From Camelus ferus (taxonomy: Eukaryota), in the NCBI RefSeq assembly GCF_009834535.1, contig NC_045713.1:868001-932000 (forward strand): DNA of 64,000 nt. Reading direction: 5' to 3'. Both the position numbers and the translations under genes were made by a program. This document shows, in pieces, positions 32,918-61,651 of this stretch. How positions within the stretch are numbered: position 1 is the stretch's first letter; the number at the start of each line of letters is the position of its first letter. A model generated the notes under the pieces. The model ran no database searches and was not told where the DNA came from. It worked only from the letters and a program-made list of their open reading frames with translations.

Positions 32918-36459
<3,542 letters not shown>

Positions 36460-36471
<12 letters not shown>

Positions 36472-36950: not shown

Positions 36951-38191
36951 GAGCTCCTGCAGGGGCACCTCTGCTCCCTGGGGGACTGTCAGGTGAGAGC
37001 GGGTGTGTTCCCTGCCATGCAGCAGAGGCTCCCCACCTGGCCAGTTCCTCTCCCGACTGAGCACTCTGGGGCAAGAGCCGTCAGCCAGTCAAGAGACCAC
37101 CTGTAAGTGAGGGTAGCAGAGGAAGGGAGACAAAGACCATTGCTGTCTGCCCTGGACCCACCCACCCCCGGTTCTCGGAGGAGTGCTTTTCCTTTTCCTG
37201 AGTAAATCCTGTGAAATCTTTTGCTGCACAACGCTGTCTCCTGTCTGTTATCTTATCTTTCAGGTGTGACAAGAGCTGGGGTCTTTTCCCTTTCCCTTTT
37301 GGGGTAACAGTTCCATGAGTCCCAAGAGAGAAGGCAGGAAGAGGAACAGATTTAACTGGAACCGAGGGGGCAGAGGCTCCTTGGAAAGAGGCAGTGGCTA
37401 AAGCCTTCCCAGTGTTGGAGAGTGGTGAGTGGATCATGGACTGAAAGAGTATTGCCCGGATTTCCAGTCACTGGGGCATCCCCGGTGACCTCAGAGCAGG
37501 TTCAGGGTAGCTCCAGAGGAAAGGGGCCCGAGGACTTGGAGGAGTGAGGAGGTGTAGACATACAGTGTAGACAAGAGGGAATCGGGCCAAAAAGAGGAGG
37601 CTTGAGATGGAGTGGGAGACCGTTTAGTTTTAAATGGAAGTGACCTGAGACTGTTAGAGGGTGAACAGCAGTCCCTGTGCTGATGGAACAGAGGCGAATA
37701 CATAAGACTGAGGAGCAAGGAACTGAGAAGTTGGAGCAGAAACCCAGCCCCGTCATGGGGTTACTTGGTTTGGGTCTGGGTGGTGCCTGGTGTACCCTTC
37801 TCAGACTCTGAGAATTGCAGATGGAGTCACCCTAAAGTTGAGAGGGGGCTGAGAACAGAGGCATCCTGTCATCAGAAAGGACTTGAGGAGACTAGAAAGT
37901 TCTGGAAGGCTGAAGCCATCATTGTAGGATTAGGGCGGGAAGGGAAAGTGTGATACCCACTCCGCCAAATTAAAGAGGACACGTGGATCTAGACCCCAAT
38001 CGCGATGCGTGGTGTCTGCAACCTGACTGTCGAGGTTCAAGGGTCTGTTTCTTGTGACTATAAAACAACAGAACTGGTGGAACCTAGTCCTTTACTGACT
38101 TTGATGGTGCGTGCTAACCTACAAAACTGGTGGACTTCTAAGTGCTAATTTCACAATTATGTCCTTCCCACCCCTCCCCCCGCCCCCACAG

Positions 38192-41100
38192 GATGCTGAG
38201 TATGCATATTTCAACTTCCCTGAACTTCTCCCTCTGAAGAGGGCTTTAATTCTCCACCTAGAGCACAATACCACCGTCGACGTTCGAACAACCTTTTCTG
38301 GGTGCTTGTCGCAGGAGTGGCAGACTTTCCTGGAGGACAGTTACCCGTATTTCCTGATAGTGGAGGATGAAGGCCTGAACCACCTCCAGACACACCTCTT
38401 CAACTTCTTAATCATTCAGTCTTGGGCGATGAAGGTCAATGCTGTGCTCTCCTCGGGCCAGGTGTCCGACTTCCTACGACTTTATGCGTATTTCATGCCA
38501 AGCAAGCACAAGAACCAGATGTTTTTCCAGAAGGTAATTTGCATCTCAAAGACAGGCTTCTGGAATGTCACAGAATTTTCCAAATTACTTGACTCAGTTT
38601 TATTTCTGCCTCTCCTATGGGAATTATCACCAGTCTCACAGAGAGGTATAGAGAAGTAGTAATAATGATGATTGTAACCCTAAATGCAGCCCTTTACTGG
38701 GCACGTGCGGCCATGACAGGAGTTAGTGTGTGGTCCTTCCAGAGAGCCATTTTATTTACCGTTTGCAGCAGCCCCGTGAGGGAGGGTCAGGGTCACAGGT
38801 AAGTAGTCTGCTCACTGTCAACACACAGTGGGTCTGAGGAGAGGCCTCTGACCCCCCTGCCTGCATATGCTCCCCTGTGGTGTGGGGTGCTGGAGCCACA
38901 GATGAGTGAAATGATGGTTAACTCAGCAGCTTTTCACGAGACAACCATGGAGAGAGTTGAGGAGGAAGGAAAAGAAGTGAAATATGTTTATTTAATAATA
39001 AATCATTAATAGAGCTTTCAAAGTATTGAGAATTTTAATTCCGTGATCTTACTACTTTGCTGTATCAGTATAATTAGTAATTACTGTACTGAAATTTTGG
39101 GAGTCAAAAATGCTCACCAGTTTTATAAATAAATCTGGTTTCTGTTTAATTTTCGCTGCTTAGAACAAATTTAGAATGTGAGGATGACTCTTATTTCATC
39201 AAAATGATTTTTGAGTTAGTTAACACTTTTCACTTTTTGAGTTTGGGGTCACACCCCTCATGATATTGGGGACATCTGGATGGTTGTAATGAAGTATAAG
39301 ATAGAACTCCAATCATTAAACCATTTCCAACTCGAGGTGCCCTCTGTGAGCAGAAACAGACCTGGGACTTGTTTCTGTATTGAGAGGAGGTCCTGTAATC
39401 CACTCACCCTTTTTTACTCTGTGAGAGCGTTTTTTGAATTTGAGTTTGAAATGTCCCTACAAGTTTCCTTCCCAATCTATCCTTCAGGAAAACTTTTTTT
39501 TAATGGAGGGTTTTATTTCTGGTAAAATAATTTTTTCCTAATTTACTGAACTCTCACCCTAGAGAGGATCTTTCACTTTCATTCTGAGGACCATGTAAAA
39601 TGCTGAAGAAGATGCAGTGTATGTTGATAATGGTAGTTACTGGGGAGGGGGGAGTGTTACGCTTTTCTCTGTGTGTATGTTTGAAATTTTTCCTAATAAG
39701 ACACAGTGCATTACATGAGTACAGTGTTTCTTTTTCAGATGTTGAAAGCGTTCTAAAATTACATTGTGGTGATGATTGCACAACTCTGTAAATTTACCAA
39801 AAGTCATTGATTTGTACCCTTAAAGTGAGTAAATTTTGTGTCATGTTAATTATACCTTCATAAAGCTGTTAAAAAAATAAAATGGACCAAATTCCCAGAC
39901 AAAAATTGATTTGGCAAAGACAAAATAGTGCTGTTTGGCAGACTTGAAAAGCACTGTTGATGATATATAATTACTTTAGTGTATTTTTTAATTTAGAAAT
40001 ATATTGTAACAATTATATCTTTAATATATGATTGTCTATAGTTGGAAAGTAATGTGACACTTTATTTATGACAATTTATGTGACTTGCCTATCTTTTACA
40101 GAATAAGAATAACATTGAAAATGCTTATAAAACCCTGATGAAGAAATTGGAAGAATGTCGACTTTTAGCATTGGGACATCTTTTTGGAAATTTTAAATGG
40201 GAAAATATGATGGAAGAGGTACTGAAACTTTAAAAAAAACCTCTTGACTTGAACTGTTTAATGACAAAAAAAAGATGCAAAAGTAGTACAGGGTCCCCAC
40301 TTGCCCCTCCCCCAGCTTCCCTGCATGTTAGCACCTAGTGTGACCACGTGCACCTGTCCAGCCAGGGTGTTAGTGTCAGTGTAACAATATTAACTAAGCT
40401 CAGACATTATTTGTATTTCACTTACATTTGCACTGATGTCCTTTTTACAGACAAAAGGAACTAAACTGAGAAACATATTAGCAACAGATTTTAATAGACC
40501 ACTTTTTCTGATTATCAAAAAGTTCCTCACAAATTTTGTTTTTTACTGGGTGCTACTATTTCTCTAATGCCTGGCATTTAAATTGTTTGAAAATTGGCTC
40601 TAACAAAGAACTCCACAGTTACGAATATATGTACGTATATGCGTAACTGGGACATTGTGCTGTACGCCAGAAATTGACACATTGTAACTGACTGTACTTC
40701 AATAAGAAAAAAAAAGAACTCTGTGATGAACATCTTGATGCCTAAATCTTGGTACATATTTTGTGGTATTTACCTAACCTAGATACCTAGAACTTGAGTA
40801 GTCAATTAAAAGTATCAACATATTTAATGATAATCTTATGTTTTACTAAATAGCTTTGCAGTAACTCTGTACCTATTTATATTCTTATCAATAAAGTAAA
40901 AGAGAAATGACATGTCATATGATTTCCAGTGCTATTATCATTAAGATATACTTTGCAAACTTGGAAGTAAAAAATATGCTAATTGTTCATTTTGTTACTT
41001 AAGAGGTTAACACTTTTATTTTTATTTGTATTTCTTTGGTGAATTATCTGCTCATCTCTTACTAAAGGCTTAGTTGTTTTCTTATTGATTTATAGGAGCT

Positions 41101-44100
41101 TCCTACGTATTGAAGTTTTTAATAATTTCACTGAAATACTTTTTATTTTCTCATGGTAAGTTTTATTGTTTTAGATAGGAATAGTTATAGTTTCGTGTCA
41201 TCAAATGTGTTCTTTGTATTTCTTCCAGTGAGATCACTTATGATTGAAACTGTTTTCCTGAACATCCTGGTATTTTACAATTTCCTTCTGTGACAGGCAC
41301 GTGAAATGATTTCTCTGCTTAAGGAGCTGTGGCCGGAAGGGTCTGACATTCGACGAGTTCTTTGTGTCACTTCATGCTCGTTGTTCTTGAGTTTGTACCA
41401 CAGCGTCTTAGAGAATAGGTCGCAGACTCCCGCTGCTCAGAAAACTAACACCCAACAGGTGCGATCATTATTTTACTGTGAAATACAACACCATGGTTCT
41501 CCATGTTTGAAATTTTATTGATTTTCATTTCCCCAATTCGTTTGATTGACTTTATTTCTCTAATTTATACGAACTTCCAAACAAGGGGTGGGGGAGGCGA
41601 TAGAATTTGTTTCTAAGACTCATCGATGGTGCCGTTACACGATTTGGTGTTTTACTCTGCACGTTTCCCTTAGTCCACGTCTAGTCAAATCTGTCCAGTC
41701 CTCCCCGGAAGAAAGGAGCTGGCACTGGTGAGAGCTGGCCACCGTCCGAGGTTCGGGTCTCCTCACACCCCTTCTGCCCTTAAATCCTCACAGTAGCATT
41801 TTTAGGGGGCGCTGTCATTCTTATTTCCCGGATGGGCACGCTGAGGTTCAGCGGGTCCGGGGAGCAGTCCTCAATCCCAACTGTTAAATGCGGTGTGGCG
41901 TGAACCCAGGGCTGTCTCGTCCCGGTTCCGCTGGTCCTGGAAGCGGCAATCCTGCCTCCCGTCCTCGCCGGGGAGACACGGAAGGGCCGAGCCTTCCCCG
42001 GCTGAGAGGCCGCCGCGGCTTCGCTGTCCCGCTGAGCAGCCGTCCCTGCGCTGCGCACACGCGCTCACACACGGGTCCCCCTGCTGCCGTGGAAGATTCT
42101 CACTAAGGAAAAACGAAGTTTTGTCTCTTTCTTCCGCAGTTTCAGAAATGAGCGGGGCTCACCGTGCTTCTCTTGCGTCCTTTGTGTGAGTCGTGTCCTG
42201 GTGGCGCGTCCCCACGGGGCTAGGCGGGTCATCTTAGGTACCACCCAAGTGACCTACACCCAGTGTCTCTGGAGCGGCTCATCCTTAGGCCCGTCTCGCT
42301 CCGGGGAGGCGCTGCACCCTCTGCGTCTGGGGCCCCGAAACCCGCGGGCACGGGAGGTGGCCAGGTTACATGCGCCCCCGCCTTTCCTGCTCCCGCCGGG
42401 GACGCCTTCCCAGCCGCGCCGCGTTCAGCGCCAGCTGTACACACGAGGCCGGGGGAGAGGACAGCCTCGGGGAGGGCTCCTGAGCCCGGGCCGCTCGGCA
42501 GCCGCGCGTCACCAAGACAGCCCGCCCCTGGGACGTGGGGAGACCGGCCTGCTCAGAACCGGGGCGTCAGTGCGTGACGGCAGCCCGCACGCGGGGAGCA
42601 GCTCGAGGGCTGCCCAGGCGTCGCGCAGCGTCACGCAGGGTCACGCAGCGTCCTGCCGCGTCCTTCAGCCTCACGCAGGGTCACGCAGGGTCACGCAGCC
42701 TCTCACAGCCTCACGCAGCCCCACGCAGCGTCGCGCGGCATTGCGCGGCCGCCGGTCCCTGACGCGCTCTGTGGCTCGTGCAGGGGGAGCGCCGCGGCCC
42801 GGCCCTGAGGGAGGCGGAGGACCTGTGCAGGCTGCGCTGTCTCGCTGCGGTTTTCCTGCTCCGCGCGCCTCTTCCCCAGAGAGCCCGCACCAGAGTCGTG
42901 GCTTCCTGCTGGACCGAGGAAATTCAGACCGCCGTACAGATGGTGAGTGGACGCTCGGCCAGGGGGCCTTGTCTCTGGTGTGTGGGAGCCACGTCAGCGC
43001 GGGCGCCTGAAAGGGTCAGTGGCCTGGTCAGTCCCTTCCGAACTCCAGCAGCTGTGTTTGCGGTAGGACCGGCCGCGCGCCGTCTCCAGCCTGAGGGGAC
43101 CATCTCTCCACTCCGCTTGCGTCAGGGCCGGGGTCGGGTCAGGCCCAGGGTCAGGGTTGGAGCCGGGGCCGGGGCCGGGGCCGGGGTCAGGGCCGGGGCT
43201 GGGGCGAGGGCCAGGGTCAGGGTCAGGGTCAGGGTTGGGGCGGGGGCCGGGTCAGGACTGGGGGCCAGGGCCAGGGCTCCTGGCCCTGTCCTCTGCTCTG
43301 CGCAGCCCGCCTGTCTGCGGGGGCGTCTGCTTCTTGCTTCTTCTTCAGCCTGAGCCCCACCCGTGGCCTTTCCCTCATCTCCTGTCCCTGGAGTGTGCGT
43401 CTCTGAATAAATCTTCACTCAAAAAAAAAAAAAAAAAAAAAAAAGAAAGAAAGAAAGAAAAAGAAAAATCAGGGTTTTGTGATGTCAACTGGGAGAGAAC
43501 AGTGACCGTTGTGTTCTGCTCTTGAGAGCCGTTGAGGAAAGCAGTCTGATTGTTTATTATTTTCGTCCAGTATTGAGGATATTTAGAGAAAATATGTTGA
43601 CTTGAAAAAAATAGCGAAAGAAAACCTTACCCAGGAGCCCACGCAAATCAGTGCTGGTCACCATTGATGTTTCAGTTTATTCTTTTTGGTGTAAATGCGT
43701 AGGTTTTTCTCTGTTATGTGTAATTGTTTCTAACATTGGGACTATACATAGTTATAGGTAAAGATATATATAATGTATAGTCTATACTTTTTTTCTTTCC
43801 ACGTGTTTTCCCAGTTTCTCCCTCACTCCACTCATTCTGTGGTGGCTATTGGCTGTTTTCGATGGACACAGCGCGGTCTGGGAAGTGAAGAGGGCGTTTG
43901 CTGTGTTATAGGTGCTGCTGCTCCCGGGTTCTTCGTGTGTGAGTCTTTCCCTTTGATCTGGGGACTCCATGCCCAGAAATGGGATTAGCAGACCTTTTTT
44001 ACGGATCTTGACACTTAGAATCCAAGTGCTCAGGGAGAGTACTTTAGAACCAGTCAGTTAGGAAGCCAGTCTACAGGTGTCGACCCACCGCACACGCGCT

Positions 44101-47100
44101 GCATGAGTCCTAGGGAGGAAACTGAGAACCTAGTTTCCCCACCCCCAGCACTGTCATAGAGCCCTGTTTTGCGGGGGAGACAGATACTGAATTTTTAAAA
44201 TTTACATTAAGGAGGAACTGCAGGATGCTTTAGTACCTGATAATGAGAAGACTCCACTCAGTCTGAGAAGGATGGCTTCTCCTAAGAAACAAAGAAGTCA
44301 GGTAACCCGAGTCTGTTGGTTTGGGCTGGTTTCACTGGTGGTGCCTCAGCGATGTCTGCTGTGGCAGCTCATGGCGTGTGCGGGCAGCACTTCCAGTCCA
44401 GGTGTGGAGGGGTGGGCCTGGGTCTGCAGTCATGAGCACTTCCAGGGGACACAGGATCATGTACTTCAAAGCCCACTGGGGAACCCTTTCCTTGGCATTT
44501 TCCATCAGGAAGAGGCAGACTGTGGTTCACTAAAGGGATAGAGATCCTGTCTTTAGCACCTATTTAATTCACTTCAGGCATCTTAGTGTAAGTCGTGCCA
44601 GGGCAGTACGCTGAGCCTAGGGATACTGTACGTCAGACACTGAAATAATATGATACAGCGTCAACAATGTTGTGCTATAAGTTTTGCTGTAAATTTACTT
44701 TCGAGAAATACTTAATTTTTTGCCAACTTTGTGTCGGTTGAATTACATGTACTCAACTACTGAATGGTATGTATATATTAATTGTGGTATTGATTTACAG
44801 ATGTAAAGGAGTGCTCTGTATGTGTAATTTTCACTTACCTGAGTTTCATAAACAGTTTTTTAATGCACAGTGGGTATTAAATGAAAAGAATAGTACAGAG
44901 TCTTTCTAAATGATGGGATGTTCTTGGGGGACCCTGCAGGACATGCTCAGTGGTCTTGGCTGGTAGAAAACATCGTTCTTTAACTAGAGTGGTGTGGATG
45001 GCCAGATATGTGGGAAGAGCACTGTTTATTCCGTGCCCGTGTTGTGTGTCCTTGACCTCTGTTACCTCATTCAGACAACACTCCTCATATGTCCTCGTTT
45101 TATGAATGAAAACCTGGGCTCAGGAAGGCTAAGTGGCCCCTTAGTGGGCAGCTAACAAATGACCAGGTTGAGGTCCTGTTTCATCTTAAGCCTGTGCCCT
45201 CCCACGCCCTCTGCTCTCCCCGCATGTTGGGAGCAGCTGATGACCCCTCACCCCTCTTCTGGTCTCCCCCTTCTCTGAGCTTCACTTGGGTAGCACCGGC
45301 ACCAGGAAGCATAACTTCAGGGAGCCTCGGACATTTTGGCAGTAAAAGGCATATTCTGAGGTCTCTGGAGAAACTGAGGAGCTCAGCAAACTGCAGGAAG
45401 GGTTTCATGTTTGCTCCAATCTTGGTACTTGAAGGCCACTTGTGGTGCCTGTCAAATGGAGTGAGTAACGTCGGGGACTTCTGGTGTTCTGTTCTCACAC
45501 ATTATTGCTGACTCAGTGGTGTGATGGGGAAGGATCTGTGGCCTGGGGGTGGGGACAGACCTCACGTGCGTGGTTCCCAAAGTAGGGTCCCCTGACCAAC
45601 AGTATCAGCATCACCTGGGACCTTGTTAGAAGTGCAGATTCCTGGGTCCACCCAGACCCATGGGATCAATCTCTGTGGATGGTGCCCAGCAATCTGTCAT
45701 ATTTAATAACCTTTCCAGGTGAGGCTTATGCTGCATTTTGAGAATCACTGCTCCGTGGCTCTTAGGAAATCTCCTCAGTTTTTATTTGTAGATAAAACTA
45801 CAGTTGAGGTGGGAGGTCCCTGCCTTTTTGGTATGTATGATTTAATCAGGAACCACAGGTAGCCGTCCTGAGTTACCTGGTTGGAGTGGAGCTGCCCAGC
45901 GCAGTAGCCAGCAGCCATAAGTGGACAGTGGGCACTTGAGATGTGGATAAGTCTAAAAGAGACACCATATTTCAAAAACTTAGTGTGAAAAACACGTAAG
46001 CTGTTCTGTTAATATTTTTATATTGATTACACATTGAAATGATAATATTTTGGATATGTTGGGTTGAATGAAATAAGTTAAAATGAATTTCAGCTTGTTT
46101 CTTTTATAATGTGACATCCAGAAGATTTGAAATAACATTTACAACTTGCCTGTTTGCCTGTGTTACACTTCTGTTGGGTTACTCTGGATGCAGTGCCACA
46201 TCGATCGAGATGACAGGAGAGCCTGAGTGTTTTATCAGTAAGGGAGTTTAGTGCAGAGAGCTGGCCTTTTTTTCCCTCTGAACCTAACTCCTCAGACTCT
46301 AACACTGACGAAAGGATGACTCCACTCACTCAGAGAAGTTACTGAACTCTTGTCTGCCTTGCTCTGTGCTAAGCATGCTCGGGGAGACATCCTGCCTGTG
46401 ACTGGTGGGGGGACAGATGCACTTCTGTTAACTCTGTGGCTGCACAATGATGTAGGCTAATGGGAATCTTTGAGTTTGAAGGTTTCAGCATCTTCTAGAT
46501 CCTTGAATGATCAAATGCTCCTTATTTTTTTTAATGCTCTTTTGACCTGGAAATAAAATGGAAAACATTAAATCCTAAGTAAATATTGTACATTTGAAAG
46601 CAGTGTTTCTGTAGTCTTGGATTTGTGGGTTACAGTAGGAGAAAAAAATGTATTAGGCATGAAATACAGATTTCTATGATTCAGAATACAGAACTATGAT
46701 GAATTCATTTTTTGGTTAGTTTGATTTTATTTTAGCTTTAACCTTGCAAGGTGTAAAGCGCTCATCATTAACCAGCCCAGAAGGGCTCACATCAGTAAGA
46801 AAAGGAGGAGCCTGGCTACCTTACCCTACGTGTTCAAGACCATGTTAGAGTTTACTGCTAATGTAAAAATTGTCAATAACTTGGTTTTATTTCCAATTTT
46901 CAGAAAAACTGGTGTGACTATTTCATCCTAAGTAATATAAATGTTTTTGAATTTTGGAATCTGAATTTAACTCACCTTTCCGACTTAAGTGATGAGCTTT
47001 TGTTGAAAAACATAGCATTTTACTATGAAGAAGAAAATGTTCAAGGTACCACCTTAGTATATTATAATAAGTATACTTTTATCCAGAGGTAGACCAAAGG

Positions 47101-50100: not shown

Positions 50101-53100
50101 GAATGAAGATGTGTAACTTTTCATTCATTTGGAGATTCAGAAGCAGAGAATGAGCCAAGGTGGGTCAGGCAGTATTTGAAGAGATGATGGCTGGGCAGTT
50201 GCCTGGATGATGAAACACAAGAATTTGCACGTCGAGGGCATACGATGGGTCCCAAGTGGGTCAGTTAACAACTGCACATGCACACTGAAAAATACCCATG
50301 CTAGACACAATGCAACAGAATCATAGAATGTGAAAAATAAGTATTTTAAAAAAATCAAGAGTTACTTACAAAGGAAAAAATTAGTCTGATAATAGACTTT
50401 CCCAGTAATGGTGATAGAAATCAGAACATAATGAAATTATATATAATTTTTAACATGTAATTTAAGAATGAAGGAGTAAAGTGGACATTTTCAAAAGTAC
50501 AAACATGGATTTATCCATCATCCTGTCACAGCTGAAGATATTTCTGCATCATGAATTTCAGGAAGAATAAAATGACCCCAGAAGGAATGTGAAGGAAAGC
50601 TAAGGGGAAGTCAGGATGTAGTTACAAGTATGGTTTTCAGAGGACAGGGGAGGAATATATATCCTCTGCCCTTAGTCAGGATAAGTCCCCTAGACAAAGA
50701 CTCTTGAGTTCGAGGAGATGGTTGGCCCCGGGAAGGTCAAATAAGGGAGTGTTAGGTAACACCAGGGAGAAAACATAGTCCATGCAGGGCGTTAACGAGT
50801 AGGTTTCCATGTAGGCAACTGCAGGTAAGTTATACTAGGAATTTTCAAACGGTGTGCAAATCACTTGGGAGATGTCTTACCCAAAGAGCAAGATAGCCAG
50901 GGTATTTACCCTGCAACTTCCATCCAGTCTTTGGGGCATGAAATCCTTAGGACGCTGGCTGTACCCACAGCTGTAAGAGGAAGGTGCCCAGGTAGAGTTG
51001 TAGGGCTCATAGGAAGGTATCAGGCAGACACTGGAACAGTGAGCATCAGGGGAGTAATAGGCAGCCTACCTGGAATTAGGAGCCAGATATTAGATAAAAA
51101 GGCATTCGTTAGCCAGCTGTCATATATACAGTGTGCATGTGACATGTATGAACACTGTTGTGTGTGTGTATCCATGTTTGTAATATCCAGAAGGATGTAA
51201 GGGAAGACACCAGTGATACCCAGTAACTTCACTGACATCGGTATCTTCCTCTACTGTTTTTTTATTTTATTTTCATAAAAGTATAATGTAAGAGATTTAT
51301 GAGTGAGACTTCCATGTTCAAATTCCTTGTCCCATAATAAGATATAAGAGAAGGAATAAATATTTGGAAATAGGAAACAGGCGTTTTTCTGTCTATCTAT
51401 CCATCCATCCACCTACCTACCTACCTACCTACCTAAGTGCTGCCTTTCTTATACACTGCGGTGTTCCAGAATGTTTTAATGTGGGAAGTAGCCTTATGGG
51501 ATGGGCTGGAATTGATCAGTGTAAATTTAGATCAATGAAAAATGTTTCTTTAATGTGAAGTTTTGGAAAATGATGTATAATATGTCTGCATGAAAGTTTC
51601 ACATTTGACCTTGTCTTAATTTTTTACTTGTTTACAGATACCTTCAAGGAAAAGATGCCTAATTTGGGTTTTATTCCAATGTCATGTCAGGTGGTGGATA
51701 AGTTTGTTGGAGACATTTTGAAAGATTTGCCCTTCCTGGTGAGGTATGGGGCTCAAAGTGCCTCAGTAAATACCTGGGTGGAATGAATGAATTACTCATT
51801 AAAGATTCTATGAAATGTGACGTTGTTTATAAATAGGGTATGCTAGATGTAATGTGTTTGTAACACATGAGTTTAATATCAAAGCCTTTTGGATCATAAC
51901 TAGGTTAAAATCAACATGATTTTAATCTTAGAGTAAAATCATTCTACCTGCGTGTTTTTAATTAATGAATTAATCTGTGAATATTTGTTGATGTTGACCT
52001 CACTGTTAGAGACACACAGTGGAGTCTGGGTTCTTAAGTCCCTAATAAACTGCTCTTTGGAGCCTACCATCCACATTCTATGACAGAAAGAGGAAAGGTG
52101 GCTGTGATTTAAAAAAAAAAATTTTTTTTAAATGAAATCTGTGCTGTGTTTGGAGGCATGTGGTTTAAAATAAGCATGTACTTCCTGTCATCTCATAGTG
52201 ACGACCCTGCTGTAACTTCGCTGGTCAGACAGAAGGAATTTGATGAACTCGTGCACTGGCATTCCCACAGACCCCTCAGTGATGACTACGACAGGACAAA
52301 GTGTCAGTTCAATGGTCAGTGCTGCGACTCTGGTGAAATAAATTAAGATCGGTTTCACTCTCTTCCTGTTATTTTATAATGAAAAGTTGTCGTGTTATGA
52401 GCCAAGAGTTATACTTCTTGAATAATAACAGTGTTCTAGGTGTTTAGAGGTGTGTCAGTGAGGCAGGTGATGGAAGAGCCCCCCTTGGTTGCTGACGGCC
52501 ACCTGTCCATGGCACGCGGCTCTCTCGGGAGGAAGTGCATGGATAATGGCATTTGTCCCCACAGAAGTTAGAAGCTTTTTTAAGCAAATACAGCTTGCAG
52601 TTTGACACCTGTGTGTTCCTTGACCTCAGAAATATTGAGGCCAAAGGCTTCTGAGCAGTTTCATCAGCTTTCACAGCACTCAGTTGTCTGCTCATCACAA
52701 GTATAGTGGTTCACCGCCATGGTGCTCAGGTTGGAGGGGCTGCCGCAGGAGGCCGGTGTCACTGCTGACAGTATGTCAGTGAGAGTGAGTTAGGGACCCT
52801 TCTCCCCGGCTCATCCCGTGTCTTCCTCTCACCCTGGTCTACCCCCTGCTCAGCCCCTCCTTCACATGGACAAAACTTAGCATCAGAAAAATCTAGATGT
52901 GTACATGATAAGCACGCTCACACACACCACTCACCAGCCCGCTGATGGACACAGCAACCAAGATCCAAAAAAATACGAGGGACTTTTTAGATTAATCCCT
53001 AACATCCTTCCAAGTGGTTTGATTTGATATTGGCAGATAAGGATAGAAAAATCAACCCACTGAATTATCCCCTTTAAGTGAGGACTGTAGTTTTCTTTGG

Positions 53101-56100
53101 GGCTGGGAGCAAGTCATACCTTTGTTGTTGGGGTTTCCTATGTCAATGGATTTTTCCACAGTGACAGGTTTTCTGAGCTGACAAGTTCTTGGCTCTGTGG
53201 CTGTGGTCTGGAGTAAGGGTTTTTCTATCAAGTAATGCAAGAAGGCCTAGATGGGTGTCTTCCTGATTCTTCCACCTTCCCCTCATTAACCTCCTTCACA
53301 GAGCACATGACAGAAGCAGTGCTCAGAAGCTGTCATTCTCTGCAGCATCTTGATGTTTACTTTGAGAGGTAGATGATGAAAGAGTGTTCTATCCCTTCCA
53401 TCCTTTAAGGAATGAGGCTACAGACGAGAGAGCTTGACTGAAGATTCCCTCTTCAATGGAAGTAATCAGCCTAAATGACTGCTCCAAACTAAAAGGAAAA
53501 GTGTGTGTGTATGTGGGGGTGGGGTGGGGTGGTGTGAAGCATCAGTGAGAATGCTGTTGCAAAAATATAGTTGTGTTGCATTTTAAGTCTTTTCTTTTTC
53601 AGAAAAATCTAGAGATCCCCATTATCTCAGATCTGTGCAAAAGTATCATGTTTTTCAGCGATTTTATGGGAAGTCACTAGAATCAGTCTCTTCAAAACTT
53701 CTTGTAACTCAAGCCGCCAAGCCCAGGAGGAATTTCTGTGAACCCAAGAGCAAAAAGGCACAGGTAGTTTCTGTTAAGTCTATCCTTTTTTTTTTTTTTT
53801 AACTTTTCTTTATCTTGTATTGTTATTTGTTCCATCTGTTTGGTAGTTGCTTTCCATACTGTGTTTTTAGAAAGTAAAGAGTTAGAAAAGATACTTCATG
53901 CAAGTGGAAACCAAAAGAAAGTAGGGGTAGCTATACTTATACCATACAAAATAGACTTTCATGCAAAGACTGTAATAAGAGAGAAAAAAGGTCGTTATAT
54001 AATGATAAAGCTGAAAACCTGAAAGCTTTTCCTCTAAGGTCAGGAACAAGACAAGGATGCCCAGACCACCACTTCTTTTCAACTTCGTACTGGAAGTTTT
54101 AGCCAGAGAAGTTAGGGAAGGAAAAGCAATAAAAAGCATCCACATTGGAAAGGAATAAGTCACACAGTCGCTATTTGCAGATGACATTACGGTACATAAG
54201 AACCCTTAAAGACTTCACCAGAAACCTGTTAGAACTAATGAATTTTATTCTTCAGTAAAATGAAGAATAAAAAATGAAGATACAAAGATCTGTTGTGTTT
54301 CTATACACTAATAAGAAACTATCAGAAAAAGAAATTAAGAAAATAACCCCATTTACAATTGCATCAAAAAAAAAATACCAAGGAATAAATTTAACCAAGG
54401 AGGTGAAAGACGTGTACTCTGAAAACTGTAAGGCATTGATGAAAGAAATTGAAGAGGATACAAATAAATGGAAAGGTTTTCTGTACTCACGGATNNNNNN
54501 NNNNNNNNNNNNNNNNNNNNNNNNNNNNNNNNNNNNNNNNNNNNNNNNNNNNNNNNNNNNNNNNNNNNNNNNNNNNNNNNNNNNNNNNNNNNNNNNNNNN
54601 NNNNNNNNNNNNNNNNNNNNNNNNNNNNNNNNNNNNNNNNNNNNNNNNNNNNNNNNNNNNNNNNNNNNNNNNNNNNNNNNNNNNNNNNNNNNNNNATGTT
54701 ACTAAGCTATAGTAATCAAAACAGCATAGTATTGGCATAAAAGTCCTAGAAGAAAGCATAAGTGATAAGCTCCTTAGTATTGGTCTTGGCGGTGAGTTTT
54801 TGGCTCTGACACCAAAAGCAAAGGTAACAAAAGCAGAAATAAACAAGTGGGACTACTAAAAAGATTCTGCACAGCAAAGGAGACCATAAAAAAAAAAAAA
54901 GGCAGCCTACAAAATGGGAGAAAATATTTGCAAATCGTATATCTGATAAAGGGTTAACATCTAGAATGTGTGATGAACTCATAAAACTCAATAGCTAAAA
55001 AACTGAACAGTTGGGTTAAAAAATGTCAGAGTGACTGAATAGATATTTAACCAAAGATGACATGCAGATGGCCAACAGGTTCATGGAAATGTGCTCAACA
55101 TGACTAATCATCAAGAAAATGCAAATCAAAACCACAGTGAGATACCACTTCACACATGTCAGAATGGCCATCATTAAAAGACCAGAGATGATAAGTGTTG
55201 GTGAGGACGTGGAGAAAAGAGAGCCCTCGTGCACTGTTAGGAATGTAAATTGGTGCAGCCCCTGTGAAAAACAGTATGGAGTTTCCTCAAAAAAATTAAA
55301 AATAGAACTGCCATATGATCCAGCAACCCCACTTCTGGGTATTCCAGAAAGGAAAACAGGATATGGAAGCTCTCTCTGCACACCTGTGCCCATTGCAGCA
55401 TTACTTACAGCAGCCCAGTTATGGAACCAGTGGAAGTGTCCACCAAGGCATGAGTGGATGAAGAAGATGTGGTAGATACATGTACATATTGGAATAGTAT
55501 TGAGTCATAGGGAGGAAATTCTGCCATTTGTGACCACACGGATGAACCTAGAGGTCAGAGGGAGGCAGATACTGCGTGGTAGAACTTACATGTGGAATGT
55601 GAAAGAAAAACACGCCAAGCTCATAGGAACAGAGAGTAGAAAGAAGGCTCCAGGCTCAGGGGTGGGGAACTAGGGTGGGTCTGGTGAAAGGGGACTGGCT
55701 CTCGGCTCCGAGAAGAGCAGGGTCTCAGGAGCTAATGTAACACGTGGCGACTGGAGCTGACAGCGTTACATCACACCACTGAGATTTGCAAAGAGAGTAG
55801 ATTTTAAATGTTCTCACCTTCCCCTCTCTGAAAGATAAATATACGAGGTGACGGATGGGTTAATTAACTCAATGGGGAGGACCCTTCCACAATGTATATT
55901 GAGTCACCATGATGCACACTTTGAATATCTTACAACTTTATTTTTCAGCTATATCTAAAATTAAAAAAAAATGTATCTGAGCAGAAGCGGGGACTTTTGC
56001 TTTAATGTCAAAAAGTAGCCTCCCCAGGCCCAGCCAGGTGGTCTTGTTTTTCTCCTTGTGGTGACCCCCTTCTTTTTATTTTCATAGCCAATTTTATTGT

Positions 56101-59100
56101 TAGTGAGACCACCCAATGACAACTGTGCCTTTTTTATTTAGGGCTACAAAAAAAGCTTCTTCTGGGTTTTTTTTTTTTTTTTGAGAGATGTTATAAATAG
56201 AAAGTTTGCACAAATTCCCATTATATAGTGTAAGGTATAAAGACTGAAAAAACATCTCATGCTTTTCTTTCTTTTACACTATCGGAAATTAAATTATCTC
56301 ATGGGGATTAAACAACCTTCACACTGTATAAATGTTCTCTTCCAGCAACAGTTTAGTAAGTCTGCATGTTCTAGCTAAAACAAGCACTGTGTGGCAAAGA
56401 GCCAAGGGTCACCTTGTCCCCTTGAGACAGAGCCATGCTGGCTCCACCTGGGACAGTACCTCTGGGAGACCAGAGCACTGAAGATGACCCATTGATGAGA
56501 ACTGAACTCTAAGAAAGTGATGAAACTAAAGTGACTTCATTACAGGCAAGGCTTAGATACTGGTATCATGGCTGACCAGTGCAGTGGGAGGTTTGTCAGA
56601 ATTCTCTACAGGTGCGACGGTTCTCTGATTTTCTCCGCAGATGAGTAAGTCAGGTTGGTAACAACATATCAGAAGTGGGTCCCTGTTGTGTTTAAGTAGG
56701 TCAGAAATGCTTGTCCAGATGGAGCAGACCTGCTCGTTTAACTTGTTCCTTCCCCTCCCTCCTTCCCTTCGTGCTCTTGCCCGTCTTCACTCACTCATCA
56801 GACAGTCTGAGCTACATCTTCCGTGCTTGGGACCCAACAACAACTGTCTCAGGGAAAGTAATCTGGAGATACAGCACGGCGCATAGGGTCATGGTGGCCC
56901 TGTGCGTGATGAGGCTTCTGTAGAGATGCCGGGCGGAGGGGGCACAGGACTTGGGCTCGTAGAGTTGGGTGAGGTTCTGTGGAAGAAGCATCTTGATGGA
57001 CACGTAAGGGTCGGGGGTGACCCTGGTGGGTAGGAGAGGAAAGCCAGTCCCTGAGAGAGTGGGAGACAGGAGGCCCAGGGGCCTGATTGTTTTCCATTTG
57101 CTCTTCGGCTGATAACCTACAGCACTCAAATCTAGGAGATGCTCTTCAGGGGCTTTACTGTCATCCAGGTGGGTTTCCACGGTATTCAGTTCACAGAGAC
57201 TTCAATTTTAAGAAACAGACAGTGAACCAAAAAGTGTGCCTTTTCAAGAATAAGAGGGTGGTCAAAATAATTAGTATACACTTACTTAAAAATACCATCT
57301 CATTCATATTGCCAACTTGTTTTATGAGATGATTCTTTCTTTTTTGAGCAGGAGACCAAGGCTGAAATAATCACTAGAGAGAATAAGAAGAGGTTATTTG
57401 CCAAGGAGGAGCAAAAAGAAGAGAAAAAATGGGATGTCCTATCATTTTCTATTGAGGAGGAGATGCAAGAGAATTTGAGCTCTGGAATAAAGAACCTGGA
57501 AGATTTTCTGAAATCGTGTACAAGTAGCTCGGTGAAATTTCGGGTAGAAATGGTAGGCTTAAAGGCCTGCTTGAAGGCGTGGAAAGAGCATTGCCGAGGG
57601 AAAGGTGTGTGAGTGGATGCTCATTTGTTTGCTTTAATAAATTGGAGAAGAAATAAAAATGTAATGATGACAGCTGTCCCTTATTAAGTGGAAATTTGTG
57701 GGAGAAGCCTTAGATGCATTATGTCATTTTCTCCTTGCAGAGTTCCTCTAAGGCTGATTTTCTCTGTTTTGTCAATGAGTGCTGACCTTTCAGAGAGGGC
57801 CCCAGTAGCAGTTAAATATACAGCACATTCATAAGCGAATTCAAATCAAATTACAGGCAAAGTTAGGTCTAAAGATAACTGCATACAGAACTGTGGGCGT
57901 GGTTCAGGGGACCAGCCGAGACGGTGAGTTTCCCGAGGAGGGTCTGTCCTTCATCTCTGAGATCTCAGCTGCAGACTTTTTCTTTCTGAGTGGAGCGTGG
58001 ATCGTGTTTGCCTGGCTTGCTGAGTCCTTCCAAAAGTGGCTGTGGTTTCCACATGCTTTGCTTTACCGCTGCTACAGTAGATGGCAGAAAGGAATGGGAG
58101 AGGCAGGAAGAGGCAGGTGATGGAGAAATCAGGCAGGGTGGAGATGTGCAAGTTGACAGGAGGTGTGACAACCAGGTGCCTGATGCCTCTGGATGGACAG
58201 CTCTTTCCTGCACCTCACTGGTCTGACTCTCCATTCTCTCCATGCTGGAGTCCGCTGCACACGTGGCTGCCAGGTTCTCTTTTCCTTCTCGTTCTACCAA
58301 CTTCAGTCTGTTGAGCAAAGTCAGCCTTTCACTGTGGCCTTCATCACCGTGAGAAGCACACGACTTGGCCTGTTTAGTGCTCACTCAGACACTGCATCAG
58401 GATTTGCATTTGGCTGCTAGTAAGGGGTTGAGGATTAGCAGTGGCTCACCTTCCTGGGCAGTGAGAATTCTGGATTAAGTGTGTTTTGTAGCCTTTATAG
58501 CATCTGTAGGTGTCTGGTAATATTTGTTAAATAGATAAAATGTAGGGTGATGTAAAGAAAGGTGGAATCAAAACAGCTCTGACAGGTAGCGCAGGAGAAG
58601 GTCAGCAGTGAGGAGGAGCAGTAGGGATGTGTGGGACTGTGAGGAAGTGGTGGGGTCACAAATTGGGGGCTGGAAGTTGTAACAGACTGAGGGAATGAAA
58701 AGGCTGCAATGATCATGCCACATACTTACCCATTAGGCCACCATTAGGATTCAAAAAATGTTGCCAAGGTTTTAACCAGATATTTAAAGTCAGCTGAATA
58801 TTTTTCTTTGAACACAGTAGAGAAGGAATGAAAATAATAGGTGGAGAAAAGATTTGTTCCCCAGAATTTATACAAACTCGGGCTTTGACGATCTTGTTTC
58901 TACCATGAACTACAAGGTGTTTCTTTTCCTTCAGCACTCAGGCAGCCACATTGCAATTATCCGTGGAGATGATGAAGTGTGTGTAGTTGCTCTTACAACA
59001 TTTAATTTTATTCAGTTGTCTGTACTCCCAAACCTCCATTAATGCTTAGACAGTGAATTTAATTGGGTCAGATTGGTAGCCTGATGACTAACCTTGGATA

Positions 59101-60322
59101 ATCAAATATTTATTGCTTTTGATGGGCTTTAAACAGTTTTGCTGTTCTTTGTCCAGGTGAAACCACAAAAGACATAAGTATAGCTGTTCAAATGATGAAA
59201 AGGATCCACTCTGTGATGGAAAAGTACCCAGAACTTTTGCAAGAGGCAGACCAACAACTCATAGCCAGATGCCTTAGGTATTTAGGATTTGAGGAGTTGG
59301 CAAGTTCTGTGCATCCATCCCAGGTAATGCTTTCAGAATAGCTCCACTTTAGTTATTAGGTATACATAAAGTGTCTTGTAGACACCATGACCTCTTTTAG
59401 ATTTTTTTTTACTGAAAATATTTACTCTAAGTTCTTAATCATTGTTAGTAATCTAGCTGCCCCAACTTGAAGTAATCCAGAGTTAGAAAATTGTGCACAT
59501 GCTTGTCTGGACAGGCAAATTAAATGCCAGATAATCTCTGCAGACCTTTAAAATCAGTCCTGTGTTTGATTCTAGCAAAACATTTAAAAGCTGTACTGTG
59601 ATTGCTCAGTTGTCTTTATATCAGACCTAGCTCAGATATCGTGGTGGGCATGTGAAATCTTGATGTCTGCTAATTATTTACTCTTAGTTAAGGTGACGAT
59701 TTAGGTGGGAAAATATTTCTTCAATAAACATACAAATCTAAAAGGTGGTGGGTGCTTTTCTCATAAAATGATTTAATTATTTTATTAAAAATAATATTTT
59801 AATCATTTAAATGATGTAATTTTTTGTGTTCTAAAGTTGTACATTTTAGCAAACGTGGTTTAAAAAACAATGCCAAGAATCCAAGTGACAATGGTAGGTC
59901 TTTTCTTTTTGTTGTTGGAGTATAGTTGATTTACAGTGTCAGTTTCAGGTGTACAGCTAAATGATTCAGTTATACATACACATACATATATACATATTTT
60001 TTTCAGATTCTTTTCCATTGTATGTTATTTCAAGAAATTGAATGTAGTTCCCTGTGTTATACAGTAGGACATTGTTGTCTGTCTATTTTATATATAGCAG
60101 GGTGTATCTGTTAAATGGTATAATTTAAAATCAGCTTCAAAATGGACTTTTAAAATATCGCAGGTCACAGGAAATGACATAAAAGAGAAGAAAAAGAATA
60201 AATACTCAGTTGGCATTGGGCCAGTTCGGTTTCAGCTGCAGCACATGGGCCAGTATTTGGTACGAGAGGAGAGGAAAGACCCAGACCCCAGGGTTCAGGA
60301 CTTTATTCCTGACACTTGGCAG
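38192..60322 (+). CDS. DDX60: DDX60 (DExD/H-box helicase 60) N-terminal region, 12 exons, 680 open codons; own first coding exons absent; cut by a gap just before Walker A
   Basis: Exons 38192-38533 (DAEYAYFNFPELL...), 40102-40218, 41297-41458, 42784-42942, 46904-47045, 48035-48190, 51638-51743, 52199-52314, 53603-53763, 57352-57604 (ETKAEIITRENKKRLF...), 59157-59323 and 60164-60322 (...DPRVQDFIPDTWQ). All GT-AG, phases concordant, 2040 nt, no stop on manual translation. Confidence 0.93.
40612..40716 (+). mobile_element. Short LINE-1 3' end with A-tail
   Basis: GTATATGCGTAACTGGGACATTGTGCTGTACGCCAGAAATTGACACATTGTAACTGACTGTACTTCAATAAGAAAAAAAA. Confidence 0.75.
42620..42735. repeat. Degenerate 10-bp tandem repeat (TCACGCAGGG/TCACGCAGCC)
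   Basis: Roughly ten imperfect units just upstream of the exon acceptor at 42783. Confidence 0.8.
43125..43280 (+). repeat. Degenerate hexamer repeat (GGGGCC/GGGTCA), G-quadruplex-prone
   Basis: GGGGCCGGGGCCGGGGCCGGGGTCAGGGCCGGGGCTGGGGCGAGGGCCAGGGTCAGGGTCAGGGTCAGGG... Confidence 0.85.
43406..43444 (+). terminator. AATAAA followed by genomic A24 (retroposon tail or intronic poly(A) site)
   Basis: AATAAA at 43406-43411, A-run at 43421-43444, then (GAAA)n. Confidence 0.55.
45569..45750. mobile_element. MER5A-like hAT DNA transposon fossil
   Basis: GTGGTTCCCAAAGT...CAGCATCACCTGGGACCTTGTTAGAAGTGCAGATTCCTGGG...TTTGAGAATCACTG. Confidence 0.8.
45890..46180. mobile_element. MER3-like hAT DNA transposon fossil
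   Basis: GTAGCCAGCAGCCATAAGTGGACAGTGGGCACTTGAGATGTGG...GATAATATTTTGGATATGTTGGGTTGAATGAAAT. Confidence 0.65.
49250..49480 (+). mobile_element. LINE-1 ORF1 fragment
   Basis: Translation HTNIRITGVPEREERQKGPEEIFEEIITENLPNL matches the L1 ORF1p RRM region. Confidence 0.85.
53860..55965 (+). mobile_element. Fragmented LINE-1 ORF2 and 3' UTR (contains 201-N gap at 54495-54695)
   Basis: KVGVAILIPYKIDF, KIQRSVVFLYTNKKLSEKEIKK and QIKTTVRYHFTHVRMAIIK...LKIELPYDPATPLLGI, with internal deletions and stops. Confidence 0.9.
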
Positions 60323-60344
60323 GTAATGACTGAATGAAATGGAC

Positions 60345-60904: not shown

Positions 60905-61651
<747 letters not shown>

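What the first reader, a model, noticed from the sequence alone, without database searches (positions are those of the whole stretch)
38192..60322. Headless DDX60 fragment with no disabling lesion in 12 exons
Seen: 2040 nt across 12 exons, all GT-AG, phases chaining correctly (0,0,0,0,0,1,1,2,1,0,1,0) with no stop or frameshift. This contrasts with the decayed MAP4K1 and RYR1 exons in the same array. The initiator exon and the exon ending 'FTIVFFK' were not found in 34.4-38.2 kb. The fragment stops at 'FIPDTWQ', one exon before the Walker A motif, so in the window it encodes only the N-terminal non-helicase region. Inference: either it is under purifying selection as part of a new transcript, or it is a very recent duplicate.
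Basis: partly seen in the sequence, partly recalled or inferred. Interest (0 to 1): 0.72.

Follow-up and report, generated by a model that had tools for sequence, protein, structure and literature searches.

The report
Headless DDX60 duplicate in camel array
This is a promoter-less, 5'-truncated duplicate of the antiviral helicase gene DDX60 in a repeat array of the wild camel genome. Ten of its 12 exons look intact because their DNA is almost identical to the real gene, not because selection has kept them.

Summary
In detail: 12 exons, 2040 nt, 680 codons, all AG/GT, phases as stated, no stop. The N run at 54495-54695 is intronic and no exon is missing there.

The window is Camelus ferus CM020785.1, about 0.9 Mb from the chromosome start. 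RefSeq already annotates the fragment as XP_032316924.1 (701 aa). The full DDX60 gene lies on another chromosome, so this is not simply the native gene mis-scaffolded.

The copy is headless because an 8.7-kb deletion removed the first two coding exons. That deletion is shared with the next array copy.

The sequence is a mosaic:
- **Up to 40337 (exons 1-2):** old paralog DNA, 1.8% from all native Camelus genes and 0.29% from the next array copy.
- **40338 to the contig end at 60344 (exons 3-12):** 0.09-0.13% from native alleles.

The next copy stays about 2% diverged. It has lost the exon-3 acceptor (AG to TG) and carries 9 nonsynonymous and 5 synonymous changes in four exons. One spliced RNA contig carries native letters.

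So I see no sign of purifying selection; the intact exons reflect recent sequence. I could not settle whether the native-like block is a real ectopic exchange (about 0.5) or a chimeric contig (about 0.4). The 3' "stop" is a contig end.

Other first-reader notes of this scan cover the same stretch.

The parts
36050..37926 (+). Paralogous copy of the DNA that lies 7-10 kb upstream of the native DDX60 start. It has a 1.2-kb deletion at 37055/37056 relative to all four native loci.
   Evidence: Aligns to native L001 1-1006 and 2229-3098 at 97.8-98.0%. The same holds for the bactrianus, dromedary and alpaca native loci.
37926..37927 (.). Junction of the 8.7-kb deletion that makes the copy headless. 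Native L001 3099-11836 is missing; one base (A) fits either side.
   Evidence: The first two native coding exons lie at L001 10204-10278 and 10856-11047, inside the missing piece. Copy 3 has the identical junction.
37927..40337 (+). Paralog-lineage DNA carrying exons 1 and 2.
   Evidence: It is 1.8% from the ferus, bactrianus and dromedary native loci and 0.29% from copy 3. Copy 2 and copy 3 share 40 sites against native. Independent runs X1 and X8 carry these letters.
38159..38191 (+). N-terminal 11 codons (MSFPPLPPPPQ) of RefSeq model XP_032316924.1. They are an ATG in the intron read through the acceptor.
   Evidence: P0274 sequence against the window ORF 38111-38659.
38192..38533 (+). Exon 1 of the fragment (third coding exon of native DDX60), entry phase 0. 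It differs from native at 4 sites: 2 synonymous, plus R16K and A58E.
40102..40218 (+). Exon 2, entry phase 0. It has two nonsynonymous differences from native: I127M at 40140 and V135L at 40162.
   Evidence: RNA contig X15 carries the native letters at both sites.
40338..60344 (+). Native-like block holding exons 3-12 and running to the contig end.
   Evidence: There are 26 substitutions against native ferus in 19,759 aligned sites (0.132%) and 18 against native bactrianus (0.091%). Six derived alleles are shared with bactrianus, and 13 are private and clustered. Copy 3 differs from it at 51 of 56 variable sites up to 42955.
41297..41458 (+). Exon 3, entry phase 0, identical to native. In copy 3 its acceptor is TG.
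42784..42942 (+). Exon 4, entry phase 0, GC 0.69. It carries R249C (42907, a letter shared with copy 3) and L258V (42934, private to copy 2).
   Evidence: All 9 sampled words of 42870-42965, which include these two letters, are held by seven runs and 8 of the 9 by an eighth, in organisms A and C.
46904..47045 (+). Exon 5, entry phase 0.
48035..48190 (+). Exon 6, entry phase 1.
51638..51743 (+). Exon 7, entry phase 1.
52199..52314 (+). Exon 8, entry phase 2.
53603..53763 (+). Exon 9, entry phase 1, with one synonymous difference at 53649.
54495..54695 (.). Run of 201 N inside intron 9/10. It is a mask, not an assembly gap, and no exon is lost there.
   Evidence: I did not read the letters.
57352..57604 (+). 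Exon 10, entry phase 0.
59157..59323 (+). Exon 11, entry phase 1.
60164..60322 (+). Exon 12, entry phase 0, ending ...FIPDTWQ with a GT donor.
60345..60444 (.). 100-N scaffold gap, 22 nt after exon 12. It is the end of the contig that carries the fragment.
   Evidence: also N in the public record.
60478..60510 (+). Last 10 codons (ACGSGDTPSR) and stop of the RefSeq model. They lie beyond the scaffold gap, in the next array unit.

Best explanation
**What it is.** The fragment is copy 2 of an unprocessed, partial duplicate of DDX60. It sits in a tandem array (MAP4K1 kinase part, RYR1 intron piece, DDX60 5' region) about 0.9 Mb from the start of Camelus ferus chromosome CM020785.1. The functional gene lies on CM020786.1.

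**History of the duplicate.** The DDX60 piece was copied with at least 10 kb of upstream flank. It then lost 1.2 kb and 8.7 kb by deletion, and the larger deletion took the first two coding exons. This lineage split from the native gene at about 1.8% divergence, which is roughly 10 My by the alpaca yardstick and predates Camelus speciation. It evolves as a pseudogene: all exon changes fall on its own branch, omega is about 0.5, and copy 3 has lost a splice acceptor.

**Why the window's copy looks intact.** From 40338 to the contig end, its DNA is not paralog DNA. It is a native-type haplotype, 0.09-0.13% from native alleles. Ten of the 12 exons are therefore a few hundred thousand years old at most.

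**How the native-like block got there.** I think the more likely route (about 0.5) is a real ectopic exchange from the native gene into this copy, by gene conversion, break-induced replication or subtelomeric crossover. Short patches from neighbouring copies would have been copied in afterwards. A chimeric contig that switches to the second native haplotype (about 0.4) is not excluded.

**Function.** Either way, the product would lack the first third of the PIN-like domain and, as far as assembled, the whole helicase. There is no evidence that it is expressed. Most likely it does nothing.

**Shown versus inferred.** Shown here: the anatomy, the mosaic, the deletions, the neighbour's lesions, and native letters in one RNA contig. 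Inferred: the route of the exchange and the lack of function.
For: **Identity and location**
- The model is 100% identical to XP_032316924.1 (P0274, contig 37.76 Mb). It has 6 of 680 residues different from native C. ferus DDX60 (P0266, a different 43.7-Mb contig).

**Deletions**
- Collinear alignment to the native locus lacks L001 1007-2228 and 3099-11836.
- The first two native coding exons lie inside the second deletion.
- All four native loci have both pieces. Copy 3 has the same junctions.

**The switch at 40337**
- Up to 40337, copy 2 equals copy 3 against native at 40 sites. After it, copy 2 equals native against copy 3 at 51 sites.
- Run X8 matches copy 3 at all 14 sites tested across the switch.

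**Decay of the paralog lineage**
- Copy 3 has a TG acceptor at exon 3, with 9 nonsynonymous and 5 synonymous changes. All are derived on the paralog branch.
- Omega is 0.51 against 0.22 for native ferus versus alpaca.

**Expression and domains**
- A spliced exon1-exon2-exon3 RNA contig in X15 carries native letters at 40140 and 40162.
- The PIN-like_DDX60 match covers only profile positions 83-222 of 225.

**For a real exchange**
- All 9 sampled words of 42870-42965, which include T at 42907 and the copy-2-private G at 42934, are held by seven runs, and 8 of the 9 by an eighth, in organisms A and C. None of the four native loci compared has that G.
- The 13 private substitutions are clustered (P = 3e-5), unlike the 6 that are private to native ferus.
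- No ferus or bactrianus native carries a copy-3 letter at 90 diagnostic sites.
Against: - **Real exchange versus chimeric contig is not settled.** The block lies within the allelic range, shares 6 derived alleles with the bactrianus native haplotype, and runs straight into a contig end and a scaffold gap.
- **The A at 40337.** It sits exactly at the switch and appears in none of the four runs laid.
- **Depths.** They fit two copies in X1 but give inconsistent answers in X2 and X8. These are contig word depths, not read counts.
- **The words.** They show T at 42907 and G at 42934 in the same runs, but not necessarily on one molecule.
- **Omega.** With 14 changes, 0.51 cannot be told apart from either 1 or 0.22.
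- **Expression.** Contigs drop minor variants, so native letters in one RNA run do not prove that the copy is silent. RefSeq does model it as a coding gene.
- **Location.** The placement in the array rests on one fragmented assembly.
Confidence: 0.78

Rival explanations
1. The native-like block (40338-60344) is an assembly artefact. A long-read contig that started in the true paralog switched, inside 98%-similar sequence, onto reads of the animal's second native DDX60 haplotype and ran on until the contig broke. The real copy 2 would then look like copy 3, diverged and decaying, and 10 of the 12 'intact exons' would simply be the native gene assembled twice.
For: - The block is 0.13% from the native ferus locus and 0.09% from native bactrianus. 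The two natives differ from each other by 0.08%. The block shares 6 derived alleles with bactrianus.
- The switch is abrupt.
- The block ends at a contig end followed by a 100-N gap, and the contig is only about 47.6 kb long.
- The A at 40337 is not seen in X1, X2, X8 or X15.
- X8 shows the paralog continuing as copy-3 type across the switch.
- Another camel assembly (CamDro3) visibly blends native and paralog letters here and carries an inverted, low-quality piece.
- A published comparison found blocks missing or misoriented in a duplicated region of this same assembly (PMC8069558).
Against: - G at 42934 is private to copy 2 among all assembled sequences, yet the words that include it are held by eight runs (7 hold all 9 words, 1 holds 8) of two organisms.
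- The private differences are clustered like short paralog patches, and native ferus and bactrianus show none.
- The X1 depth after the switch (154) lies nearer the two-copy expectation of about 160 than the roughly 125 expected under this model. The same reasoning fails for X2 and X8, however.
Confidence: 0.4
2. The fragment is kept intact by purifying selection because it is part of a new transcript, for example an N-terminal DDX60 decoy or a fusion with the upstream HPK1-like kinase gene.
For: - There is no stop or frameshift, and all 24 splice sites of copy 2 are intact.
- RefSeq models it as a coding gene, and a Pkinase gene lies upstream on the same strand.
- Omega of 0.5 is below 1.
Against: - Ten exons are intact simply because their DNA is 99.9% native.
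- In the exons that are truly paralogous, 4 of 6 changes (copy 2) and 9 of 14 (copy 3) are nonsynonymous, and copy 3 has lost an acceptor.
- Paralog-branch exon divergence (14 of 780 sites, 1.8%) is not lower than the intronic paralog branch of about 0.9%.
- The PIN-like domain is cut at profile position 83.
- The RefSeq start and end are an intron read-in and a piece beyond a scaffold gap.
- The only spliced RNA seen carries native letters.
- The annotation keeps the kinase gene and the fragment as separate genes.
Confidence: 0.07
3. The whole fragment is the one native DDX60 gene, wrongly placed in this scaffold.
For: Exons 3-12 and their introns are near-identical to the native locus.
Against: - The same assembly holds a complete native gene elsewhere.
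- Positions 36050-40337 are 1.8-2% diverged from all native loci, carry two private deletions, and are contiguous, without N, with the array upstream.
- Copy 3 repeats the structure on another contig.
- Paralog letters occur in independent runs and in the CamDro3 dromedary assembly.
Confidence: 0.02

Closest known systems
Native DDX60 of Camelus ferus (XP_032317566.1, P0266; locus L001 on CM020786.1)
   Same: The exon-intron structure is the same for coding exons 3-14. Residue identity is 674 of 680. The introns are collinear, and the DNA is 99.9% identical from 40338 on.
   Different: The fragment lacks the first two coding exons (and presumably the promoter) through an 8.7-kb deletion. It is 1.8% diverged over 36050-40337 and lies on another chromosome inside a MAP4K1/RYR1-derived array. 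No helicase exons are assembled after exon 12.
RefSeq model XP_032316924.1, 'probable ATP-dependent RNA helicase DDX60' (701 aa, C. ferus)
   Same: It is this very locus. The 680 residues are identical and the coordinates match.
   Different: The model adds 11 residues from an intronic ATG and 10 residues from beyond the scaffold gap. It is named as if it were a helicase, although no helicase domain is present.
Unprocessed partial pseudogenes in subtelomeric or pericentromeric segmental duplications, with concerted evolution between copies (general knowledge, not tested as a family)
   Same: Introns are retained and the gene is truncated. It is juxtaposed with pieces of unrelated genes and repeated in tandem. 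Divergence between copies is a mosaic, and the array lies 0.9 Mb from a chromosome end.
   Different: A 20-kb tract at allelic-level identity to a parent gene on another chromosome is unusually long for gene conversion. That is why an assembly artefact remains a serious rival.
DDX60L, the known mammalian paralog of DDX60
   Same: It belongs to the same family.
   Different: The fragment is only 58-61% identical to DDX60L proteins, against 99% to camel DDX60. It is not DDX60L.

Membership tests
DDX60 helicase (functional gene) | Complete N-terminal PIN-like_DDX60 domain (PF23002) | tested here: not met
   P0274 matches profile positions 83-222 of 225 only, whereas native P0266 matches 2-223. 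The missing part is encoded by the two deleted exons.
DDX60 helicase (functional gene) | DEAD/ResIII and Helicase_C core with the Walker A motif | tested here: not met
   P0274 has no such Pfam hit. tblastn with native residues 777-1653 finds nothing in the window. The contig ends 22 nt after exon 12, so absence from the real locus is not shown.
DDX60 helicase (functional gene) | Own initiator exon (and promoter region) | tested here: not met
   An 8.7-kb deletion removes native L001 3099-11836, including the coding exons at 10204-10278 and 10856-11047.
DDX60 helicase (functional gene) | Close sequence relationship to DDX60 rather than DDX60L | tested here: met
   Identity is 99% to camel DDX60, 73-81% to DDX60 of other mammals and 58-61% to DDX60L.
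Unprocessed partial pseudogene from a segmental duplication | Introns retained and collinear with the parent, at a different locus | tested here: met
   The locus assignment rests on one assembly.
Unprocessed partial pseudogene from a segmental duplication | Relaxed constraint or disabling lesions | tested here: inconclusive
   Copy 3 has a lost acceptor, with 9 nonsynonymous and 5 synonymous changes. Copy 2 has 4 nonsynonymous and 2 synonymous changes in its paralogous exons and no lesion. Omega of 0.51 is not separable from 1 or from 0.22.
Unprocessed partial pseudogene from a segmental duplication | No transcript of its own | tested here: inconclusive
   One RNA run shows a spliced contig with native letters only. 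Contigs drop minor variants, and no further runs could be laid.
Assembly artefact (chimeric contig or duplicated haplotype) | Identity to the native locus within the allelic range | tested here: met
   The block differs by 0.132% and 0.091%, against 0.081% between the two native references. This applies to 40338-60344 only.
Assembly artefact (chimeric contig or duplicated haplotype) | Single-copy read depth over the duplicated block | tested here: inconclusive
   Contig word depths are 133.8 and 95.3 before the switch and 154 after it in X1; 10.3 and 10.2 then 18.6 in X2; 37.8 and 33.2 then 28.1 in X8. No single copy-number model fits all three.
Assembly artefact (chimeric contig or duplicated haplotype) | Block-specific variants absent from other individuals | tested here: not met
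   The word set that includes G at 42934 is held by eight runs (7 hold all 9 words, 1 holds 8) of organisms A and C.

The most novel reading that the evidence does not exclude
The array copy is periodically overwritten by the native gene through ectopic exchange between chromosome-end regions. Native DDX60 lies at the very end of its chromosome in the dromedary and alpaca assemblies. Such exchange would keep a promoter-less N-terminal DDX60 module (partial PIN-like domain plus TPR region) intact, and an array promoter could then express it as a truncated regulator or decoy of an interferon-induced helicase.
Probability: 0.06. Interest if true: 0.6.

Novelty: new member of a known kind. Interest (0 to 1): 0.27.

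Why it matters
It matters mainly as a caution.

- **Annotation.** RefSeq lists this locus as a 701-aa 'probable DDX60', and a first reading suggested an intact, possibly selected immune-gene fragment. The intactness is explained by sequence recency, and the neighbouring copy is visibly decaying.
- **Camel immunogenomics.** DDX60 reads, variants and expression counts over coding exons 3-14 can be contaminated by paralog copies. One older dromedary assembly already blends the two.
- **If the block is real.** A real 20-kb native-like block would be a clean example of long-range ectopic exchange between a chromosome-end gene and a distant array.
- **If it is chimeric.** A chimeric block would mark a mis-assembly in a reference genome.

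Tried and rejected
- **Read laying on 37500-43499.** I avoided those places and used the last call on 39900-40620.
- **Alignment of P0146 with the 12 exon translations (A1).** I built it to bias a profile search towards camelids, but MAFFT misplaced several short exons. I dropped it and searched with P0146 alone.
- **Greedy splice-site chaining script.** It failed, so I replaced it with peptide-anchored exon coordinates.
- **Copy-number modelling from contig word depths.** It gave 1:1 paralog to native in X1, about 0:1 in X2 and about 2.4:1 in X8. The predictions for the region after the switch contradict each other, so I treat it as inconclusive.
- **The search for homologous proteins with P0274 and a second listing of cluster members.** I was looking for fragment-type DDX60 proteins in other camel assemblies. 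Neither found any, so I could not fetch the array from the HiFi dromedary or Bactrian assemblies.
- **The look-up of sequencing runs on 61 nt.** The stretch was too short for the index, so I repeated it on 96 nt.
- **Literature search for camel DDX60 duplicates.** Nothing relevant turned up.
- **DDX60L as the identity of the fragment.** Rejected at 58-61% identity.

Full report
**1. Observation**

The window has three N runs: 12635-12734, 54495-54695 and 60345-60444. I mapped DDX60 proteins found by a library search onto the window with tblastn. I then fixed exon ends by peptide anchors and rebuilt the model. It has 12 exons, 2040 nt and 680 codons, with no stop. Every acceptor is AG and every donor is GT, and the phases are 0,0,0,0,0,1,1,2,1,0,1,0.

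- The first 96 native residues and everything after exon 12 are absent from the window.
- The 201-N run lies in the intron between exons 9 and 10. The protein alignment is continuous across it, and the flanks are collinear with the native locus, which has 201 bases there.
- The public record of this same locus has letters at that place, so it is a mask rather than a gap. I did not read those letters, and I left that stretch out of all alignments.
- Exon 12 ends 22 nt before the 100-N run at 60345. That run is a true scaffold gap.

**2. Whose genome, and is it annotated?**

The 680 residues are 100% identical to P0274, which is XP_032316924.1, 'probable ATP-dependent RNA helicase DDX60' of Camelus ferus (701 aa). 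The other identities are:

| Compared with | Identity |
|---|---|
| Native C. ferus and C. bactrianus DDX60 | 99.12% |
| Dromedary DDX60 | 98.97% |
| Alpaca DDX60 | 96.9% |
| DDX60 of other mammals | 73-81% |
| DDX60L | 58-61% |

The locus is CM020785.1:896159-938510 of GCA_009834535.1, about 0.9 Mb from the chromosome start. The full 1710-aa gene is on CM020786.1.

The RefSeq model's first 11 residues come from an ATG in the intron at 38159. Its last 10 come from 60478-60510, beyond the scaffold gap. Pfam finds only positions 83-222 of the 225-position PIN-like_DDX60 profile, and no helicase domain.

**3. Surroundings**

The window is a tandem array:
- 1-12634 matches 23231-35905 at 98.1%.
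- 32918-36471 matches 60445-64000 at 98.1%.

The annotation puts a 360-aa Pkinase gene upstream on the same strand. It also calls two small unnamed genes on the other strand, and a further 500-aa gene that starts at the equivalent of exon 1 in the next unit.

**4. Why it is headless**

Aligned to the native locus (L001), the window matches as follows:

| Window | Native L001 |
|---|---|
| 36050-37055 | 1-1006 |
| 37056-37926 | 2229-3098 |
| 37926-54494 | 11837-28413 |
| 54696-60344 | 28615-34269 |

The duplicated segment therefore begins more than 10 kb upstream of native DDX60 and has two internal deletions. The larger one (8.7 kb, with one base of microhomology) contains the two missing coding exons, at L001 10204-10278 and 10856-11047. 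The native loci of C. bactrianus, dromedary and alpaca all retain both pieces. Copy 3 of the array, which lies on the next contig, has the identical junctions.

**5. The mosaic**

Divergence from the native locus is about 2% from 36050 to 40337. It then falls to about 0.1% up to the contig end.

A three-way comparison with copy 3 (window equivalent 65456-70510) makes the switch explicit:
- Up to 40337, copy 2 equals copy 3 against native at 40 sites. Only 7 sites show other patterns.
- After 40337, copy 2 equals native against copy 3 at 51 of 56 variable sites.

With all native loci included, in 37926-40337:
- the paralogs are 1.74-1.87% from the three Camelus natives;
- those natives differ among themselves by 0.12-0.25%;
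- alpaca is 2.9% from everything.

The paralog lineage therefore predates Camelus speciation. If Camelini and Lamini split about 15.8 Mya (PMC13603154), it is roughly 10 My old.

Over the 19,759 aligned sites of the block:
- copy 2 is 0.132% from native ferus and 0.091% from native bactrianus;
- those two natives differ by 0.081%;
- copy 2 shares 6 derived alleles with bactrianus.

**6. Selection**

Copy 2 differs from native at 9 coding sites:
- four in exon 1 and two in exon 2 (4 nonsynonymous, 2 synonymous), all shared with copy 3;
- two nonsynonymous in exon 4;
- one synonymous in exon 9.

Copy 3 carries 9 nonsynonymous and 5 synonymous changes in exons 1-4, and the acceptor of exon 3 is TG. 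All 14 changes are derived on the paralog branch.

Omega is 0.51 for the paralog, against 0.22 for native ferus versus alpaca. With so few changes, 0.51 cannot be distinguished from either value. Nothing points to constraint, though, and exon divergence on the paralog branch (1.8%) is not below the intronic branch (about 0.9%). The ten lesion-free exons in the native-like block say nothing about selection.

**7. Independent reads**

The second covered 39900-40620 and showed:
- **X1 (organism A):** native letters at 40058, 40140 and 40162, and paralog letters at 40240-40327.
- **X2:** native letters throughout.
- **X8 (organism B):** paralog letters throughout. After the switch it carries five further letters (40489-40556) plus a loose end at 40618. 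All of these equal copy 3.

So the paralog lineage is real in other animals, and there it continues as copy-3 type. All four runs have G at 40337, where the window has A.

RNA run X15 holds a spliced contig whose loose ends match the end of exon 1 and the start of exon 3. It carries native letters at 40140 and 40162. That is evidence for native mRNA and none for the copy.

The depths do not fit one copy-number model, so I do not rely on them.

**8. Real exchange or chimeric contig?**

*For a chimeric contig*
- The divergence is allelic-level and the block looks like an ordinary native haplotype.
- The block runs into a contig end.
- An unsupported base sits exactly at the switch.
- Chimeric joins in duplicated regions are common (general knowledge).
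- The older dromedary assembly CamDro3 shows an interleaved native/paralog pattern here, and an inverted, low-quality piece after the equivalent of 41049.

*For a real exchange*
- The 96-nt stretch 42870-42965 differs from native at T 42907 (shared with copy 3) and G 42934 (private to copy 2). All of its sampled words are held by seven runs, and 8 of the 9 by an eighth, in organisms A and C. Eleven other runs hold the 0.56 share expected for copy-3 type.
- The 13 copy-2-private substitutions are clustered: seven neighbour gaps are under 200 bp, against 1.5 expected (P = 3e-5). The six sites private to native ferus are not clustered.
- Native ferus and bactrianus carry no copy-3 letters at 90 diagnostic sites.
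- This clustering is what short conversion patches from array neighbours would leave on a block that physically sits in the array.
- Tracts of very low divergence between array copies show that homogenisation, or assembly duplication, occurs there. Copy 1 against copy 2 has 0 differences over about 1,470 sites, and copy 2 against copy 3 differs by 0.29%.

I put a real exchange at about 0.5 and a chimeric contig at about 0.4.

**9. Comparison with known things**

The fragment is DDX60-derived, not DDX60L. It fails three defining features of a functional DDX60: a complete PIN-like domain, a helicase core, and an initiator exon of its own. It fits the pattern of an unprocessed partial pseudogene inside a segmental-duplication array.

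I found no paper on a camel DDX60 duplicate. The only record of it is the RefSeq model.

**10. Verdict**

This is an ordinary kind of object with an unusual, still unresolved 20-kb native-like tract. Interest is low to moderate.

Noticed in passing
L004 (dromedary CM070327.1:47920320-48009087) and L005 (alpaca CM108738.1:12283-98742): Native DDX60 lies at the very end of its chromosome in the dromedary and alpaca assemblies, with its 3' end about 7 kb and 22 kb from the end of the record. In the C. ferus and C. bactrianus assemblies it is placed 15.5 Mb and 33.3 Mb into chromosomes of different lengths. Either the gene is subtelomeric in camelids and two assemblies are mis-scaffolded, or the chromosomes differ.
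   Followed up: no
L006 11856-26212 (dromedary CamDro3, CM016645.2): The older dromedary assembly has native and paralog letters interleaved at adjacent diagnostic sites between the equivalents of 38364 and 40140. After the equivalent of 41049 it jumps to an inverted piece that is 93% identical with over 400 gap openings. This looks like a collapsed and mis-joined assembly. It also shows that the paralog exists in dromedary.
   Followed up: partly
window 40337: The window has A where copy 3, all native loci and all four runs laid have G. This is the last difference before the switch to native-like sequence.
   Followed up: partly
window 9674-12634 vs 32918-35905: Copy 1 and copy 2 show no substitution over about 1,470 aligned sites of the DDX60-flank part (34418-35905 equivalent). 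They differ more further upstream, and copy 3 is 0.2-1.4% from both. The array copies are much closer to each other than to the native locus.
   Followed up: partly
window 42784-42942 (exon 4): The high GC (0.67-0.69) and 14-16 CpGs of this exon are the same in the native DDX60 of C. ferus, C. bactrianus, dromedary and alpaca. The GC-rich exon is a feature of camelid DDX60 itself, not of this copy.
   Followed up: partly
L002 37531-42352 (window equivalent 65689-70510): The annotation calls a further gene with a 500-aa product. It starts at the same intronic ATG in copy 3, although the acceptor of copy 3's exon 3 is TG. I could not retrieve the protein.
   Followed up: no
window 39900-40366, runs X1, X2, X8: The assembled contigs keep a different branch in each run: mixed letters in X1, only native letters in X2 and only paralog letters in X8. 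This hints that the paralog's copy number varies between animals or species.
   Followed up: no
window 60071-60154: A tight cluster of 4 substitutions and 2 indels against all native loci lies 190-270 bp from the contig end, just upstream of exon 12. It could be a paralog-type patch or poor consensus at a contig end.
   Followed up: no
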